Shown in pieces: positions 5,533 to 34,845 of a stretch of 64,000 nt of DNA. How positions within the stretch are numbered: position 1 is the first letter of the stretch; each line of letters begins with the position of its first letter. The stretch is from positions 62,001 through 126,000 of IMG/VR virus record IMGVR_UViG_3300027770_000026. One strand, 5' to 3'. The notes under the pieces are model-generated. The model was not told where the DNA came from and did not search any database. It worked only from the letters and a program-made list of their open reading frames with translations. The translations under genes and the position numbers were made by a program.

Positions 5533-5756
5533 TGGATTTTCCCCATAATTTTAGCTGCTGCTACTTCAGCTTCTAGCTCTGCATGTTTGGGCAAAGTTAA
5601 CCAAATATCAAACTCTTCGGGTGGGATTTCTTCCTCTTCATAGCCCAAAAGCATCATAAGATCGGAACTGCGAAGCTCATCCACTCCCTGCTGTTTGAAT
5701 TGGTACATGATGGAAAGGATTTGGTCACGCAGTGGCTGATCGTCATCATCGTTCAT
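5529..5756 (-). CDS. acidic hypothetical protein
   Basis: ORF track; GGAG SD; ATGA overlap. Confidence 0.65.
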   Translation of the reverse strand: MNDDDDQPLRDQILSIMYQFKQQGVDELRSSDLMMLLGYEEEEIPPEEFDIWLTLPKHAELEAEVAAAKIMGKIH

Positions 5757-6121
5757 TTGGTTGCTCCAATTTTAAAAGTTTTACCAGTTGGTGCGGCTAT
5801 TCGTTGGAGCTCAATGAATTTTTCTAGATCTAAGGTTGCAAGGTCCTGCCACGTTTCTGCATACCTGCATGTCACCCGAAACAGTGTAGCAGTGTCGCTG
5901 GCTGCGGGCATTAGGTTATCAAAACGGTCCGTGCCGTAGTACCTCAACCTAATAGGAAAGATTTGAGCAATATTCCAGGCCATAGCTTTGTTCTCGGGTG
6001 TGTACTGAACCAGAATACTCTGTTTTGCGTTTACATGCATGTAGCACCAATCCTGCTGCTCAGGATTGAGTATGAGAAAACGTAGTGTAGTGTCGTGTAT
6101 GCTGCCTTTTACAAGGGTCAT
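5753..6121 (-). CDS. hypothetical protein
   Basis: ORF track; AAGGA SD. Confidence 0.65.
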   Translation of the reverse strand: MTLVKGSIHDTTLRFLILNPEQQDWCYMHVNAKQSILVQYTPENKAMAWNIAQIFPIRLRYYGTDRFDNLMPAASDTATLFRVTCRYAETWQDLATLDLEKFIELQRIAAPTGKTFKIGATK

Positions 6122-6170
6122 GGTACTGTCCTTATCTTAACGCCTGCTTCATTGTTTATCCTATAGATAT

Positions 6171-6208
6171 GAGGGTTTTTCTGTTGCAGGGAAAACTCAC
6201 AAACCCCG
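6171..6208 (-). repeat. 38-nt copy of the tmRNA coding-piece 3' element (hairpin)
   Basis: 35/38 identical to 8682-8719. Confidence 0.9.
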
Positions 6209-6214
6209 TAATGC

Positions 6215-6451
6215 TTAGATCTTACCGTTAGAGATGAACTCGTTGAGGCGCGAAGCCTTAACAATTACATCTTCTTCAGTAAAGTACTGGGGGAACTCTG
6301 GGGTATCGGGCAATGCCTTTTGATTGTGCATTGCTGATTGAACCTGATTGTTCCAGTCTGTCTCAACAAATCCACGCTTGCTGTGGTATTCGTCGTTGAG
6401 CATGTCCTTTGCGAGCCGTACTAGCTCTAGTCTAATTTCAAATGGTGTCAT
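6215..6451 (-). CDS. conserved small myophage protein (PFEIRLEL family)
   Basis: MTPFEIRLELVRLAKDML...; AAGGAG SD preceded by a CA-rich tract and a GCAGGA/TCCTGC hairpin. Confidence 0.85.
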   Translation of the reverse strand: MTPFEIRLELVRLAKDMLNDEYHSKRGFVETDWNNQVQSAMHNQKALPDTPEFPQYFTEEDVIVKASRLNEFISNGKI

Positions 6452-6539
6452 CTTCGTCTCCTTGTGTGTATGTGTGTACGCAGGATCGTTCCTGCAATTG
6501 TATATAGCAGATAGTTGTACTATTCATATAAATATTGGT

Positions 6540-8681
6540 ATGAAAATACATGATATACTCACCGAAGCACAGCGTTTTGACTTCGACAAACACCGTGATA
6601 CTATTCTGCGTTTTGTGCAAAATACGCTGGCCGGCAAGCCCAATAACAGACAATTCAATCCCTTTTATGAACTGATTGTGGGTGGCGGGCAAGTGGGTGC
6701 CGCAAACAAATTGGGTATTGATCCCAAGATGGCAGCAACATGGAAACAGTACTTCCAAAGCAAGCCCTTCCTAGGTGGAGCCGGTGAACCTTGGAGTCAG
6801 GTTAACATTGGTGATCAGTACGCTAAGGCCACAGGCGATGACCGAACCCTGAACTTTTATGTTACTGTAAGCAAAGACAAGGACAATATAATGAAGTTCT
6901 TTAGGAACTATCACAGCCTTGCTAGCTACTTACAGCCCATAAGTCAACAGAACCAAACGCCTATCAAGTTTAAAACACACAGTATATTAGACAGCTTTAT
7001 TGGGCACAACGACAGTTTCAAGGTCTACTACTACGATCCTAAACTACGGAACCAAATAGTTGCTGCTGTTAAGAAATGGCTCAGTGACAGTGGTGTAAGC
7101 ACTGCTGCAAGATCACACGAACACGGCGTGGACGTAAAGAGTAATGGTGGTAGCTTTGGACAGTTACTAAGCAATCACGTATACGACGAGTTCACCAAAC
7201 TGATAAAAACAAACGGCGCTAAGGTTACTCCTGAACAGTACTTTGACTGGCTTAAGAAGAATCTCCCTGTGTTAATAGCACAGGTAAAGCCTAAGGAGCA
7301 AATGACAGAATCCTGGAGCAAGGGCTACAAGAAGAGCATTGATTGCTCAAATCCAAAAGGGTTTGGTATGAGAGCCAGCGAATTTATAACTGAAACACCA
7401 CTTGATCCTAGCACATCAAGTAAAATACTAGCTATGGCAACACGGCAAAAATACCAACTGCTGGGACAAGGCGCTGATGCTACTGTATTTGGTAGCTCTA
7501 CTCACCGTCCAAAAACGGTAGTTAAGATAACGTCGGGCGAACTATACACATCTGCAAAAAAAGCCAGCATAGGTTTCGACCACTTTTACGAGTTTTGCCA
7601 ACAGCACCCCGATAGCCCCTACCTGCCAAAGTTTGAGGAACGGGGATTCTTTGAAGTAAACAGGGAAAAGATTCCTTGGGTGCGTATGGAGCGTTTGAAC
7701 GAACATCCACAGGATTTGCATATCTATGCTGCTGTAGATACGCTAATAGAGGAATCATTTAAAAACGAATTTGCTGATTGGAAACTTGTGAAGTCTCTGC
7801 ATCCAAAATTGACCCTACAACAGCTGGGGATGCTTAAGAAATTTTACTCCATGCTCTCGGAACTAACAGACTACTTTTGGAAAAAAAGATCCAAATTGAA
7901 GTGGGATCTAGGAAAACGTAATATTATGTACCGTAGTAACGTTCCTGTTATCACAGATCCGTTCATGGCTAAAGAGCGAGAAGAATATGAAGAATCCTGG
8001 AGTAAGAGCTACAAGAAGAGCATTGATTGCTCAAATCCAAAAGGGTTTAGTCAACGTGCTCACTGTGCGGGACGCAAAGCACGACGTGCGGGCAAGAAGA
8101 CCAAAAGCGGTAGCGTAAGTGAAGAAGGAGAACTACTTTGGTCGTCAATGAATGAAGCTAGAGCCAATAGTGTGGAAGATTACAAGCCCACTGACCAACA
8201 ATTAGATGACCTAAAAAGCAAGTATCTTCCCAATTGGGAAATGTCAGATCATAAAATGTTACAGGCACGCTACATAGCCAAAGATCATCGACGTGCTGAA
8301 AAATTTATCAGGTTCATAAACCAAGTATCCGAACGTATGGATCACTTTGCCAAAGTAACTCAGGATGTATCCGAAGTCACTGTGGAAACAACTACCTTTG
8401 ATGTAAAAGGTCTGACTATTTTGGACTTCCAGTTGGCCTCGGCCATAGACAAATATGCAGAAAGAAATCAAATTGAACAGGCGAGGTCAGGCGGTAATTT
8501 TGAAATGTATGAAAACTTTGCAGATGGCGAGAAGCCTGGTCGCAAAGGACTAGCCAAACGTTCAGGTGTTGACTGTAAGCAAAGTGTGAGTAAATTGCGT
8601 AGTGTTGCTAAGAATAGCACAGGTGAAAAGCAGCGTATAGCACATTGGTGTGCCAATATGAAATCAGGGAAGAAAAAATAA
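6540..8681 (+). CDS. capsid-targeted polyprotein: HopA1-like domain, Ser/Thr kinase-like domain, pterin-carbinolamine-dehydratase-like domain and Cys/basic peptide modules
   Basis: TATAAATA at 6527-6534 then ATG 6540 (MKIHDILTE); kinase LGQGADATVF/VVKI/DLGKRNIM/TDP; PCD-like LPNW...MDHF...GLTILDFQLA; modules separated by xxE sites. Confidence 0.8.
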   Translation: MKIHDILTEAQRFDFDKHRDTILRFVQNTLAGKPNNRQFNPFYELIVGGGQVGAANKLGIDPKMAATWKQYFQSKPFLGGAGEPWSQVNIGDQYAKATGDDRTLNFYVTVSKDKDNIMKFFRNYHSLASYLQPISQQNQTPIKFKTHSILDSFIGHNDSFKVYYYDPKLRNQIVAAVKKWLSDSGVSTAARSHEHGVDVKSNGGSFGQLLSNHVYDEFTKLIKTNGAKVTPEQYFDWLKKNLPVLIAQVKPKEQMTESWSKGYKKSIDCSNPKGFGMRASEFITETPLDPSTSSKILAMATRQKYQLLGQGADATVFGSSTHRPKTVVKITSGELYTSAKKASIGFDHFYEFCQQHPDSPYLPKFEERGFFEVNREKIPWVRMERLNEHPQDLHIYAAVDTLIEESFKNEFADWKLVKSLHPKLTLQQLGMLKKFYSMLSELTDYFWKKRSKLKWDLGKRNIMYRSNVPVITDPFMAKEREEYEESWSKSYKKSIDCSNPKGFSQRAHCAGRKARRAGKKTKSGSVSEEGELLWSSMNEARANSVEDYKPTDQQLDDLKSKYLPNWEMSDHKMLQARYIAKDHRRAEKFIRFINQVSERMDHFAKVTQDVSEVTVETTTFDVKGLTILDFQLASAIDKYAERNQIEQARSGGNFEMYENFADGEKPGRKGLAKRSGVDCKQSVSKLRSVAKNSTGEKQRIAHWCANMKSGKKK
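7307..7364 (+). repeat. 58-bp direct repeat, copy 1
   Basis: 56/58 identical to 7991-8048; encodes ESWSKxYKKSIDCSNPKGF. Confidence 0.95.
7991..8048 (+). repeat. 58-bp direct repeat, copy 2
   Basis: 56/58 identical to 7307-7364. Confidence 0.95.
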
Positions 8682-8978
8682 GAGGGTTTTTCTGTTGCCA
8701 GGAAAACCCACAAACCCCGGTCTATTCCGCTATTAGGCGGCTAGTGCCATGTCGTAATTGCTATCGTTTGCAGTTACTGTTTTTGCGCTGATTAAGTCAG
8801 TCGCCTCACTGGTAGCCCTTAGTTTATTACTCACCCTGTCAAACCTGGTCGGCCCCAACAACAACACACTTCGTCCTGCAGTACATTCCTAATAGGTGTG
8901 ACACGGTCTGCAAATGTGCTGTTGGTGGAGCCGGGGGGAATCGCACCCCCGTCCAAGATGCCTTTAGTTAAGAGTTTA
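8682..8978 (-). ncRNA. ssrA: circularly permuted two-piece tmRNA
   Basis: Acceptor piece about 8978-8923 ends CGGCTCCACCA; self-pairing intervening segment 8922-8857; coding piece starts GGGGCCG at 8856 (G3.U70 pair); tag GCA(8771)..TAA(8733) = ANDSNYDMALAA; 3' CTG-GCAA-CAG hairpin; TATAAT at 8989-8984. Confidence 0.93.
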
Positions 8979-8996
8979 CTACCATTATACACTTAC

Positions 8997-9746
8997 TTAT
9001 AGTTTTTGATCATATGGTACTTCAATCCATCTACGATTATTCCACGTTGTATTGATAGTATGCACAACACCTTTCCTTATATCATGATAAAACAGTCTTG
9101 CTTGTGTTTGTGATGTGATGCTATCAACTAATGCCCAAAAACTGCTCGACACACAATGTATTTCTGTTGCGTTTCTGATCAGAGTAACCCACTTTAACAA
9201 GTTACCCTGATCTAGATCCAAAGTAACATAGATTATTTTGATATTAGGTAACCCGTTCACAACACGATATTGTTCAATGTCAATTGGAAAGCCATCTAGG
9301 TAATGACTGGATGATTTATGAATCAATACATATGGTTCTCCGGGGGTAACTAACGAACAGTACAGTTCATCCGAATCATCAATATGTTTTGGTAAACGAA
9401 AATTAGTATATCTCAAAGAGAAAGGCAAGTTATAAGAATCATAATATTGCTGAGAGAAATTAATTGGGATATGAATTCCGTTTATAACTGTGTAATTAAG
9501 CATCCTTCTCTTAATTTGAGAAAGTCCGCTATCTGATATGTATTGAGGTTCATAATTTGGGTGTACAGATACTACCTTAATATTAGGCCAATCTTGATAC
9601 AGACAACGAGTAGTTTCATAATAGCAAGGTTGAGTCGGAATATGTAATTCTCGACACCGATCGCCATAGTAATGAGCTATACCATTGTGAATAAAAGTAT
9701 CACCGAGGCTTTGATAACCTATAAAGAACAAACGATCAAATATCAC
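8997..9746 (-). CDS. glycosyltransferase-like protein, paralog 2
   Basis: SLGD..I.NG N-terminal motif and A.EIHCVSSSF C-terminal motif, GT-B (GT9/GT11-like) pattern; paralog of next gene. Confidence 0.6.
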   Translation of the reverse strand: MIFDRLFFIGYQSLGDTFIHNGIAHYYGDRCRELHIPTQPCYYETTRCLYQDWPNIKVVSVHPNYEPQYISDSGLSQIKRRMLNYTVINGIHIPINFSQQYYDSYNLPFSLRYTNFRLPKHIDDSDELYCSLVTPGEPYVLIHKSSSHYLDGFPIDIEQYRVVNGLPNIKIIYVTLDLDQGNLLKWVTLIRNATEIHCVSSSFWALVDSITSQTQARLFYHDIRKGVVHTINTTWNNRRWIEVPYDQKL

Positions 9747-33593: not shown

Positions 33594-34757
33594 TTAGGCG
33601 TTCTCGACTTGTACGCTGGTGTTGAGTACAGCAGCAGTTAATTTCCAAGGAACTGTAACTCCGCTTGCAAACTCATATGCTGCACCATTAATAGCCTTGC
33701 GTGTCAATAGCGCACGGTGAGCTGTTAGTTTGGTTACATAATATTCGTTTGTGTCGCTGTCAACTGCAACAATAGTTGCTTCACCAGCAGCCGGACCTGC
33801 AGCTACTAGCTTGACTTGGCTTTGGCCTTGTGCAGTGTCTACTAGATAACGACGGCTTGCTTCCTGCTTGATGATATCACCAGCTACTGCTGAACTTCCG
33901 CCAACGACCCATGCAGTGATCTTGATAGCATTTGCCTTAGTTGAAGTTAGTGTGATAGTCTGTAGTGTTACGCTTTGTGTAACGCTTGAACTTGGAGCAG
34001 TATAATAACCTGCACCAGCAGTTGTGATCACTACTGACTTAGCACGATATGTTGGCGTAATTGTTAGACCAGCACCGTATGTATCACATACAGCAGCTTG
34101 TGCACCTGTTACTAGTGCTTCAAATTCGCCACGGTTAACTGGGGTCAGTGCCGTGACTGTGCCGTATGTTACACCGCGTGTGAATGTTGCACCTGTTACA
34201 GTTGAACCACCAATTGCTAGTGGACTGGTTGCAGCTACTGCATCAGCATAGGTAGCATACAGTGTTGCAGCAGTTGCTGTTGTTGGTGCTCCAACGTAGT
34301 AAATCTGTCCGCCAGCAATAGTTGTACCACCAATGGTCAAGTTACCAGTAACTGTTCCAGTAATGTGAATACTGGTACCAGAAATCATTGCAGTTGTAGT
34401 GGTGGTGAAGCTGATCTGAGTGTTAGCAGAGTTAGCTATGCTTGATAGTGCGCTGGATGTTACAGTTGCAGTGTATGTTGATGTTGTTGTACCACCAACA
34501 AAACTGATTGCACCTGCTGTAATAGGATAAGCACGAGTCTGTGTGCCACCAATCGCAACACTTAACACTTCTGATGTGATAGTACCTAGTGCTAGTACAC
34601 CACCTGACGCTACTGGAACGTCAGGGTTACCAAATGTGATCAACGGACGAGTGGTGTATGAACCTGCAGCATTAACTGCTGCGCTTGCTACACCTTCACC
34701 ACCTACTGGTGGGCTGTTTGTATTACCAAAATATTTCTTATGAATCGGGCGTCCCAT
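33594..34757 (-). CDS. virion structural protein (Thr/Ala/Gly-rich)
   Basis: MGRPIHKKYFG start, beta-rich, IIKQEASRRYLV; own late promoter and terminator. Confidence 0.75.
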   Translation of the reverse strand: MGRPIHKKYFGNTNSPPVGGEGVASAAVNAAGSYTTRPLITFGNPDVPVASGGVLALGTITSEVLSVAIGGTQTRAYPITAGAISFVGGTTTSTYTATVTSSALSSIANSANTQISFTTTTTAMISGTSIHITGTVTGNLTIGGTTIAGGQIYYVGAPTTATAATLYATYADAVAATSPLAIGGSTVTGATFTRGVTYGTVTALTPVNRGEFEALVTGAQAAVCDTYGAGLTITPTYRAKSVVITTAGAGYYTAPSSSVTQSVTLQTITLTSTKANAIKITAWVVGGSSAVAGDIIKQEASRRYLVDTAQGQSQVKLVAAGPAAGEATIVAVDSDTNEYYVTKLTAHRALLTRKAINGAAYEFASGVTVPWKLTAAVLNTSVQVENA

Positions 34758-34845
34758 TTTGTTTCTCCTTAAGTGAGTTAAAGTCGTTCTAGGACTTACG
34801 CGGTGGGGACCGCATAACTCTGTTATTGAACAGACAATGTATTTA
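34758..34845 (-). promoter_or_regulatory. late promoter and three-hairpin 5' leader
   Basis: TAAATA 34845-34840; hairpins TCTGTT/AACAGA, TATGCGGT/ACCGCGTA, AGTC/GACT; AAGGAG. Confidence 0.55.

What the first reader, a model, noticed from the sequence alone, without database searches (positions are those of the whole stretch)
6171..6510. An ordinary gene carries a copy of the tmRNA 3' element
Seen: the 38-nt element ending the tmRNA coding piece (8682-8719) recurs at 6171-6208 with 35/38 identity. In both places it starts a few nt after a TAA stop (6 nt here, 13 nt after the tag). This 78-aa gene also has a hairpin plus ACACACATACACACA leader. Inference: either the mRNA borrows a tmRNA processing/stability signal and is co-regulated with it, or the repeat is the scar of a 2.5-kb insertion at the tmRNA 3' end. 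No integrase is visible.
Basis: partly seen in the sequence, partly recalled or inferred. Interest (0 to 1): 0.7.

Follow-up and report, generated by a model that had tools for sequence, protein, structure and literature searches.

The report
Phage tmRNA end-hairpin copied behind neighbour gene
A jumbo freshwater phage carries a second, slightly worn copy of the hairpin that ends its two-piece tmRNA, placed just after the small gene that normally follows tmRNA in over a hundred related phage loci; it most likely serves as an RNA 3'-end stem-loop and is not the scar of an insertion.

Summary
The repeat is real: 6171-6208 matches 8682-8719 at 35/38. These are the only two copies in the 266-kb phage genome.

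Copy 8682-8719 is the conserved 3'-terminal hairpin of a permuted, two-piece tmRNA on the minus strand. It may form a pseudoknot. Its stem covaries strongly across 30 distinct phage tmRNAs.

The 78-aa gene is not ordinary. It is the conserved downstream neighbour of phage tmRNA: tmRNA lies upstream in at least 65 of 85 loci, and the protein family has 2346 clusters of unknown function.

The insertion-scar idea fails. Relatives L004, L085 and L094 lack the 713-aa plus-strand ORF, yet their 78-aa gene is still flanked by two hairpin copies. The 713-aa ORF is a separate, later insertion of about 2.2 kb between the tmRNA hairpin and the gene's CA-rich leader.

About 96% of family loci have an ordinary GC-rich terminator hairpin at the second position. 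Elsewhere, similar copies follow other small ORFs downstream of tmRNA.

Best reading: the hairpin was duplicated locally and is kept similar to the tmRNA copy by gene conversion. It is reused as an intercistronic 3' stem-loop for end protection or processing. It is not a terminator, because it has no U-tract. The window's copy is weakened, so function here is uncertain. Interest is moderate.

The parts
8659..9038 (-). Permuted (two-piece) tmRNA gene. Acceptor piece about 8983-8923, intervening segment 8922-8857, coding piece from 8856, tag ANDSNYDMALAA ending with TAA at 8735-8733.
   Evidence: Rfam RF04321 142.1 bits and RF01850 124.5 bits; ARAGORN; landmarks computed.
8679..8721 (-). Copy c2: the 3'-terminal hairpin of the tmRNA coding piece. 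Stem GGGUUUU/AAAACCC with an inner CUG/CAG helix and a GCAA loop. A pseudoknot is possible between the upstream G-run and the loop CCU.
   Evidence: Model R1 scores 38.2 bits. MFE is -12.7 kcal/mol. It is homologous to the hairpin modelled in RF01850. The family stem has 7 of 8 pairs with compensatory changes.
8667..8681 (-). U-rich tract after c2 (UCUUAUUUUUUCUUC on the RNA). With c2 it looks like an intrinsic terminator for the tmRNA. Its complement encodes the last codons (GKKK, stop) of the 713-aa ORF.
   Evidence: Read directly from the sequence. The consensus terminator scan does not call it, because the stem is interrupted.
6540..8681 (+). 713-aa ORF on the opposite strand, inserted between the tmRNA and its partner gene. 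It is a fusion of three modules that exist as separate phage proteins: residues 1-284 unknown, 280-481 faintly T7-kinase-like, 529-653 Pterin_4a. The modules are joined by a repeated linker, ESWSK.YKKSIDCSNPKGF.
   Evidence: Translation; Pfam Pterin_4a E 2.7e-16; Atlas structural rows. In IMG/VR it occurs only in this phage. It is absent from L004, L085 and L094.
6479..8671 (.). Approximate extent of the insertion (about 2.2 kb) relative to L004, L085 and L094.
   Evidence: In those relatives the hairpin is followed within about 10 nt by the CA-rich leader (alignment; sequences).
6480..6495 (-). Perfect 6-bp hairpin (GCAGGA/UCCUGC) directly upstream of the CA-rich leader. It is unique to the window. 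It may form the 5' stem-loop of a now independent 78-aa mRNA, starting from an extended -10-like TGcTATATA at about 6509-6501.
   Evidence: Sequence. The scan lists it as terminator-like on the + strand. The promoter assignment is by eye only.
6458..6479 (-). CA-rich leader (6462-6479) and the Shine-Dalgarno GGAG (6458-6461) of the 78-aa gene. The leader is conserved wherever this gene directly follows the tmRNA.
   Evidence: L004, L085, L094, L010, L034, L063, L023, L049 and L116 show the same CA-rich leader.
6215..6451 (-). 78-aa gene, the conserved downstream partner of phage two-piece tmRNA. Function unknown. It is mildly acidic and is predicted to be a long helix plus a short helix.
   Evidence: More than 590 relatives in IMG/VR and 2346 clusters. 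tmRNA lies upstream on the same strand in at least 65 of 85 loci. AlphaFold2 pLDDT 93. pI about 5.
6168..6210 (-). Copy c1: the second copy of the tmRNA 3' hairpin. It starts 6 nt after the TAA of the 78-aa gene and ends about 45 nt before the start of the next gene. There is no U-tract. The canonical stem is weakened by a G-to-A change, and an alternative 7-bp stem GGGGUUU/AAACCCU is predicted.
   Evidence: 35/38 identity. R1 scores 25.0 bits, E about 1e-3, with a model built without it. MFE is -8.5 kcal/mol against -12.7 for c2.
5753..6121 (-). Next gene downstream (122 aa, orphan). It marks the end of the cassette shared with other phages.
   Evidence: Its only relative is the same phage in another sample. 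tblastx of L004 against the window shows that only the tmRNA and the 78-aa gene are shared.

Best explanation
c2 (8679-8721, minus strand) is the conserved last structural element of the phage's two-piece tmRNA. It is a hairpin with a conserved loop, probably closed into an H-type pseudoknot, lying just after the tag stop.

In this phage family the tmRNA and the 78-aa gene form one cassette on one strand. Often only about 40 nt separate the hairpin from the gene's start codon. The mRNA must therefore be a 3' extension of the tmRNA precursor, and the tmRNA's 3' end must be made by processing back to this hairpin.

In one sub-lineage (window, L004, L085, L094) the hairpin was duplicated to the 3' side of the 78-aa gene. 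Other family members have an ordinary GC-rich terminator hairpin at that position.

The two copies are kept alike within a genome by re-copying or gene conversion.

The second copy (c1, 6168-6210) most likely acts as an intercistronic 3' stem-loop. It would stop 3'-to-5' exonucleases or mark a processing boundary of the polycistronic RNA. It does not terminate transcription.

The 713-aa ORF is a later, unrelated insertion. It cut the 78-aa gene off from the tmRNA promoter.

Shown: the identity of the element, the conserved cassette, the presence of two copies in relatives that lack the insertion, and the covariation of the stem. Inferred: the RNA-level function, gene conversion, and the pseudoknot.
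For: c2 is part of the tmRNA. RF01850 aligns its own 3' hairpin to it. All phage tmRNAs examined carry the element right after the tag. In 30 distinct sequences, 7 of 8 stem pairs show compensatory changes, with 0 of 500 shuffles reaching the observed score.

The cassette is conserved. tmRNA lies upstream of the 78-aa gene in at least 65 of 85 loci, and the gap from tag end to ATG is as short as 92 nt.

The hairpin looks like an end-defining structure. In L173, L175 and L186 a tRNA gene starts 6-7 nt after the hairpin with no terminator between them.

Second copies behind the 78-aa gene occur without any insertion:
- L004: 43.3 bits.
- L085: 49.3 bits, identical to its tmRNA copy over about 40 nt.
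- L094: 28.3 bits.

The L004 second copy differs from its first by two compensatory pair swaps. It is more stable than the first (-15.6 against -13.6 kcal/mol, z -3.9).

Similar copies follow other small ORFs downstream of tmRNA in L023, L116 and L117, with intact stems.

In the 97 of 101 distinct family loci that lack the copy, an ordinary terminator-like hairpin occupies this position. This is consistent with a generic 3' stem-loop role.

The two copies resemble each other within a genome more than they resemble the same-position copy in other genomes.
Against: There are no RNA data. Only DNA runs hold this sequence.

The window's c1 is the weakest second copy. It scores 25 bits against 38 for c2. 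Its MFE is -8.5 against -12.7 kcal/mol, no better than shuffles (z -0.4). The G-to-A change breaks the canonical stem.

In L005-L011 the corresponding hairpin appears to have lost most of its loop. The tmRNA-specific features are therefore dispensable at this site.

The pseudoknot helix is only 3-5 bp and is not significant against shuffles.

Only 4 of 101 distinct loci have the arrangement.
Confidence: 0.5

Rival explanations
1. c1 is a functionless relic. A local duplication or recombination left a copy of the tmRNA 3' hairpin behind the 78-aa gene, and in the window it is drifting away.
For: All three substitutions in c1 fall within the canonical hairpin and its predicted MFE is weaker (-8.5 against -12.7 kcal/mol), with a switch to another stem. 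Its model score is low (25 bits). The arrangement is rare (4 of 101 loci). Apparent loop-deleted remnants occur in L005-L011.
Against: The repeated segment coincides exactly with the structural unit in four genomes. The L004 second copy keeps all 9 stem pairs through two double changes and keeps the loop. The L085 copies are identical although the adjacent gene is only 68% identical to L004's. A window-type strain from another study seems to carry a variant with an intact GGG stem, though this rests on one short contig.
Confidence: 0.3
2. The copies matter mainly at the DNA level. Short repeated regulatory sequences bracket the gene and promote cassette exchange, loop-out or gene conversion, like the PeSL cassettes of T4-type phages.
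For: The tmRNA plus 78-aa cassette sits in unrelated genomes. Only these two features are shared between L004 and the 64-kb window. The region is a mosaic: L004 and L085 tmRNAs are 99-100% identical, while their 78-aa genes are 68% identical. The region between the tmRNA and the 78-aa gene is hypervariable, with a gap of 92 to 3965 nt holding different small ORFs, some followed by hairpin copies. PeSL precedent: PMC2839356.
Against: In L004 the right-hand breakpoint of the window-like tract lies inside the conserved 3' end of the gene, not in the second hairpin (sequences). No contig joins c2 to c1 with the interval deleted. The element contains no promoter. Most loci shuffle genes without a second copy.
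Confidence: 0.1
3. Both copies are binding sites for one trans-acting factor that co-regulates the tmRNA and its partner mRNA. The factor could be the 78-aa protein itself (autoregulation), a ribosomal protein or an RNase.
For: The loop core (UUC.YNG.AACAGAA) is conserved across classes of the hairpin and in the second copies of L004, L085 and L094. The hairpin, leader and 78-aa gene are tightly linked.
Against: The 78-aa family is mildly acidic (pI 5-6.7) and shows no RNA-binding fold or family. Copies in L023, L116 and L117 have shortened or altered loops. The protein-RNA complex prediction was not folded, so it is no evidence either way.
Confidence: 0.07
4. One reading: the repeat is the att-like scar (displaced tmRNA 3' fragment) of a 2.5-kb element integrated at the tmRNA 3' end.
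For: A direct repeat brackets 2.5 kb next to a tmRNA gene. tmRNA genes are a classical integration target in bacteria (PMC4383910).
Against: L004, L085 and L094 lack the 713-aa ORF but have both copies. The true insertion boundaries (about 6479 and 8671) are not at the repeat. There is no integrase or other recombinase. The 78-aa gene inside the interval is the ancestral neighbour of the tmRNA, not cargo.
Confidence: 0.02

Closest known systems
3'-terminal hairpin/pseudoknot of betaproteobacterial-type two-piece tmRNA (Rfam RF01850 beta_tmRNA; permuted tmRNA RF04321)
   Same: c2 is that element. It has the same position after the tag stop and a stem of the same kind with a related conserved loop. 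RF01850 aligns to it.
   Different: In bacteria and in some phages (L006, L008) a separate terminator hairpin follows. In the window the hairpin itself is followed by the U-tract. A second copy outside the tmRNA gene (c1) is not part of the family description as far as I know (own knowledge).
Intercistronic or 3' stem-loops that protect upstream mRNA from 3' exonucleases (REP elements in malEFG, the puf operon hairpins)
   Same: A stable stem-loop a few nt after a stop codon, inside a polycistronic unit, without a U-tract. This is the role proposed for c1. The comparison rests on my own knowledge of those systems.
   Different: Here the stem-loop is a copy of a functional part of a neighbouring structured RNA and keeps that RNA's loop sequence. 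No stability data exist.
PeSL promoter/stem-loop cassettes of T4-type phages (PMC2839356, PMC4122927)
   Same: Short conserved regulatory repeats flank small variable ORFs in a hyperplastic region and are associated with modular exchange between phages.
   Different: PeSLs combine a strong early promoter with a terminator and occur many times per genome. This element has no promoter, occurs twice, and derives from the tmRNA.
Genomic islands or prophages integrated into tmRNA/tRNA genes with a displaced 3' gene fragment (Islander, PMC4383910)
   Same: A direct repeat of the 3' part of a tmRNA gene brackets a block of DNA next to the gene.
   Different: There is no integrase. The setting is a phage genome. 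The repeat is present in relatives without the extra DNA. The bracketed 78-aa gene is the ancestral neighbour.

Membership tests
Two-piece (permuted) tmRNA | tRNA-like domain, tag reading frame and permuted gene order, detected above the curated Rfam thresholds | tested here: met
   RF04321 scores 142.1 bits (gathering score 47) and RF01850 scores 124.5 bits (gathering score 84). ARAGORN reports a permuted tmRNA with tag ANDSNYDMALAA**.
Two-piece (permuted) tmRNA | The 38-nt element is an integral, conserved part of the RNA | tested here: met
   It is present after the tag in all phage tmRNAs examined. The stem covaries (7 of 8 pairs). RF01850 models the homologous hairpin. This holds for c2 only; c1 lies outside any tmRNA.
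H-type pseudoknot | A second helix between upstream bases and the hairpin loop, supported by covariation | tested here: inconclusive
   The 3-bp helix is paired in 95.6% of cells, but the alignment shows one-sided changes only. GGG:CCU against GAG:CUU appears compensatory after hand realignment. It is not significant against shuffles in single sequences.
Intrinsic (Rho-independent) terminator | A stable GC-containing hairpin directly followed by a U-tract | tested here: not met
   c1 is followed by CAUAUCUAUAGG, with no U-tract. c2 does have a U-rich tail by eye, but the consensus scan does not call it.
Integrative element at a tmRNA gene (tDNA island) | An integrase or recombinase gene within the bracketed DNA | tested here: not met
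   Pfam and PHROGs on the 713-aa and 78-aa proteins give only Pterin_4a. The Atlas modules are unknown, kinase-like and Pterin_4a.
Integrative element at a tmRNA gene (tDNA island) | The repeat arises with the insertion, so empty sites have a single copy | tested here: not met
   L004, L085 and L094 lack the 2.2-kb insert and still have two copies.
PeSL-type mobile regulatory cassette | A sigma-70 early promoter fused to a terminator stem-loop, repeated many times in hyperplastic regions | tested here: not met
   There is no promoter-like site in or at the element. There are only two copies in 266 kb.
3'-end protective / processing stem-loop | RNA 3' ends map just downstream of the structure, and removing it shortens the half-life | not testable with these tools
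   No RNA run holds the sequence. There is indirect support only: tRNA genes start 6-7 nt after the tmRNA hairpin in L173, L175 and L186.

The most novel reading that the evidence does not exclude
The tmRNA terminal hairpin or pseudoknot is a portable, specifically recognised RNA 3'-end or processing signal. Freshwater phages would attach it to mRNAs of the tmRNA operon, so that the tmRNA and its universally linked 78-aa partner protein are matured and regulated together by one factor. If so, the 78-aa family would be a phage-specific component of the trans-translation system.
Probability: 0.12. Interest if true: 0.65.

Novelty: new variant of a known kind. Interest (0 to 1): 0.4.

Why it matters
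A structural module of tmRNA can be copied and reused outside the tmRNA gene. The same hairpin ends the tmRNA in polycistronic phage transcripts.

The analysis also brings out a very large, unstudied gene pair. A phage two-piece tmRNA is followed by a conserved protein of about 80-90 aa (2346 clusters), whose function may bear on why phages carry tmRNA at all.

For genome annotation, a direct repeat of a tmRNA 3' end is not by itself evidence of an integrated element.

Tried and rejected
**Identity of the 78-aa protein**
- Pfam gave no hit and PHROGs only sub-threshold ones (best E 0.0051).
- A PDB profile search gave only a chance hit.
- Foldseek against PDB gave nothing. BFVD gave only uncharacterised phage proteins.
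- tblastn against GenBank phages found no match.
- hhalign against T4 gp33, tested as a late-transcription co-activator idea, gave probability 0.3% and was rejected.
- The JGI name 'proteasome lid subunit RPN8/RPN11' carried by some members looks spurious.

**Protein-RNA binding**
- The protein-RNA complex prediction was counted but not folded, so it is no evidence.

**Relatives and transcription data**
- The upstream 249-aa gene has no relatives in IMG/VR.
- A search for RNA-seq found only DNA runs.
- Laying contigs showed fragments and strain variants, but no junction that deletes the c1-c2 interval.

**Structure tests**
- The shuffle test of the pseudoknot helix was not significant.
- My first regex for the loop motif was wrong and its output was discarded.

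**Other context**
- Stenotrophomonas phages with a related tmRNA have tRNA genes, not the 78-aa gene, next to it.
- The Sharkady and Williams 2004 paper on beta two-piece tmRNA is not held. The pseudoknot assignment therefore rests on Rfam and my own reading.

Full report
**1. Observation**

The window is bases 62001-126000 of a 265,892-bp IMG/VR virus record. The stretch carries ribonucleotide reductase, DnaB-like helicase and other replication genes.

A permuted, two-piece tmRNA lies on the minus strand. RF04321 scores 142 bits at 8733-8983. RF01850 scores 124.5 bits at 8659-9038. ARAGORN reads the tag ANDSNYDMALAA**.

The 38-nt element at 8682-8719 recurs at 6171-6208 with 3 mismatches, against 0 expected by chance. 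These are the only copies in the whole genome, both by pattern search and by covariance model. The stated spacings, 6 nt after the TAA of the 78-aa gene and 13 nt after the tag's TAA, are correct.

**2. What the element is**

Read on the RNA strand, c2 is a hairpin directly after the tag stop. Its stem is GGGUUUU/AAAACCC, with an inner CUG/CAG helix capped by GCAA. A U-rich tail follows.

The same element follows the tag in every phage two-piece tmRNA fetched here. In 30 distinct sequences the 8-bp stem shows compensatory changes at 7 pairs. It is paired in 90% of cells, and 0 of 500 shuffles reach the observed score. The 15-nt loop is conserved (consensus UCCUCGUAACAGAAU).

RF01850 models the homologous hairpin of bacterial beta-type tmRNA and aligns it to c2.

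An upstream G-run can pair with the loop's CCU to make an H-type pseudoknot. The pairing is kept in 95.6% of cells. It is short, however, and not significant against shuffles. I therefore call it probable, not shown.

A second class of the hairpin, to which the window's belongs, ends the tmRNAs of 20 further viral contigs with other tags. In three of those, a tRNA gene starts 6-7 nt after the hairpin with no terminator between. The hairpin is therefore the last structured element of a tmRNA that is cut out of a longer transcript.

**3. The gene is not ordinary**

The 78-aa protein has more than 590 relatives in IMG/VR, 486 in JGI metagenomes and 2346 clusters in the large protein collection. 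None has a Pfam domain.

In at least 65 of 85 loci with enough upstream sequence, ARAGORN finds a permuted tmRNA upstream on the same strand. ARAGORN misses some that the hairpin model finds.

The distance from tag end to ATG ranges from 92 to 3965 nt. When it is short, the hairpin is followed by a CA-rich leader and the start codon with no room for a promoter. The mRNA is then a continuation of the tmRNA precursor. Where the distance is long, small secreted-looking or OMP-like ORFs fill the space.

The protein is predicted with high confidence (pLDDT 93) as a long helix, a loop and a short helix. It is mildly acidic. It has no informative relative by sequence or fold and is not related to T4 gp33.

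**4. The insertion-scar hypothesis fails**

L004 has 91% amino-acid identity in the 78-aa protein. Its tmRNA hairpin is followed after about 10 nt by the CA-rich leader and the gene, with no 713-aa ORF. A second hairpin copy follows the gene's stop. L085 (66% identity) and L094 (55%) show the same layout.

The pair of copies flanking the 78-aa gene therefore predates the window's extra DNA and is independent of it.

Relative to these loci the window does have an insertion of about 2.2 kb (about 6479-8671). It holds the plus-strand 713-aa ORF and lies between c2's U-tract and the leader. The repeat does not bound it, and it encodes no recombinase.

Loose ends in the source sample show L085-type junctions from hairpin to leader. 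Relatives without the insertion therefore coexist with this phage.

**5. How common, and how the copies evolve**

Among 101 distinct loci with sequence downstream of the 78-aa gene, the hairpin model hits right after the gene in four: window, L004, L085 and L094. The rest have ordinary GC-rich terminator-like hairpins there.

L005-L011 belong to the same sub-lineage. They carry a short hairpin with the same stem as L094's second copy but with most of the loop missing, followed by a terminator. This looks like decay of an older copy.

Hairpin copies also follow other ORFs downstream of tmRNA:
- L023: 40.3 bits, after a 60-aa secreted-looking ORF, with a G-C to A-U swap in the stem.
- L116: three copies, two of them in tandem.
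- L117, and the L049 type: a variant loop but an intact stem.

Within a genome the two copies resemble each other:
- Window: 35/38.
- L085: identical over about 40 nt.
- L004: 86%, with two compensatory pair swaps and a conserved loop. The second copy is more stable than the first.

The hairpin regions differ strongly between genomes (65-70% identity), although the mature tmRNA parts are 91-93% identical. This pattern points to repeated copying or gene conversion between the two sites.

L094 is the exception. Its two copies belong to different classes, and its second copy with its terminator resembles the tmRNA 3' end of the L008 type. That fits recombination between lineages.

The region is mosaic. 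L004 and L085 tmRNAs are 99-100% identical, but their 78-aa genes are only 68% identical. L004's gene is of the window type.

The cassette also sits in unrelated genomes. Only the tmRNA and the 78-aa gene are shared between the 16-kb L004 locus and the 64-kb window.

**6. Mechanism**

The second copy occupies the place of a 3' hairpin, starts 4-10 nt after a stop codon, and has no U-tract in the window, L004 or L085. The next gene's ribosome-binding site follows within 10-45 nt.

I therefore propose that it is an intercistronic stem-loop. It would protect the upstream mRNA from 3' exonucleases or mark a processing boundary, which is the job the same structure does at the end of the tmRNA. This is inference, because no RNA data exist.

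In the window the copy is weakened. A G-to-A change breaks the canonical stem, the predicted fold switches to an alternative 7-bp stem, and the energy drops from -12.7 to -8.5 kcal/mol. A functionless relic is therefore a serious rival.

One short contig from another study suggests a window-type strain whose second copy keeps the GGG stem.

The insertion has separated the 78-aa gene from the tmRNA promoter. An extended -10-like motif and a perfect 6-bp hairpin lie just upstream of the leader. They may now give the gene its own transcript with a 5' stem-loop. This was assigned by eye only.

**7. Comparison with known systems, and verdict**

c2 is a member of the tmRNA family. c1 is a copy of a tmRNA part outside any tmRNA.

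It works most like the intercistronic 3' stabiliser hairpins of bacterial operons. It also shares with the PeSL cassettes of T4-type phages (PMC2839356) the property of being a short regulatory repeat in a variable region.

It is not an intrinsic terminator, not an att scar, and not a PeSL.

The second alternative is refuted. The novelty is modest: a new variant of a known kind. The more interesting by-product is the very widespread, unstudied pairing of phage tmRNA with the 78-aa protein family.

Noticed in passing
window 6215-6451 (-) and loci L004-L163: The 78-aa protein family (2346 clusters, no Pfam domain, predicted helical hairpin) sits downstream of a permuted tmRNA on the same strand in most of about 100 distinct phage loci. 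It may be a phage-specific partner of trans-translation. Function unknown. Some JGI records name it 'proteasome lid subunit RPN8/RPN11', which looks spurious.
   Followed up: partly
window 6540-8681 (+): The 713-aa ORF is a fusion of three modules that occur as separate phage proteins: unknown, faintly T7-kinase-like, and Pterin_4a. They are joined by a repeated linker, ESWSK.YKKSIDCSNPKGF. A related Cys- and basic-rich motif ends the protein. Its last codons are the complement of the tmRNA's U-tract. An identical 69-kb contig from another sample (L003/L165) breaks at the first linker repeat.
   Followed up: partly
window 34755-34834 (-): A freshwater-2 RNA motif (RF02980, 64.7 bits) lies immediately upstream of the ORF 33594-34757 and ends with its ribosome-binding site and ATG.
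   Followed up: no
loci L014-L083; e.g. L023 7000-7960, L049 7300-7970, L116 1960-2600: The space between the tmRNA and the 78-aa gene is hypervariable (92 to 3965 nt). It holds small ORFs with signal-peptide-like N-termini and Ala/Pro/Lys-rich or AKKE-repeat tails, and OMP-like ORFs.
   Followed up: partly
L116 1871-1957: Two different hairpin copies stand in tandem directly after the tmRNA tag (36.7 and 62.3 bits). A third, shortened copy lies at 2250-2284, after an AKKE-repeat ORF.
   Followed up: partly
L173 3630-3753, L175 6303-6426, L186 4725-4847: In other phages with the window-type hairpin, a tRNA gene (Asn or Gly) starts 6-7 nt after the tmRNA hairpin. ARAGORN's tmRNA span overlaps the tRNA.
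   Followed up: yes
window 8857-8922 versus L004 and L085: The intervening segment that is removed from the permuted tmRNA precursor is unrelated between the window and L004 (53% identity). The mature pieces are 91-93% identical. L004 and L085 are 100% identical in this segment.
   Followed up: partly
family loci, first ~12 nt after the 78-aa gene stop (e.g. L013, L020, L022): Many family members end the gene with TGATAGGGAT(T/C)GG before an ordinary terminator hairpin. This resembles the UAGGGUUUCGG that precedes the tmRNA hairpin. It may be coincidence or a trace of an old copy.
   Followed up: no
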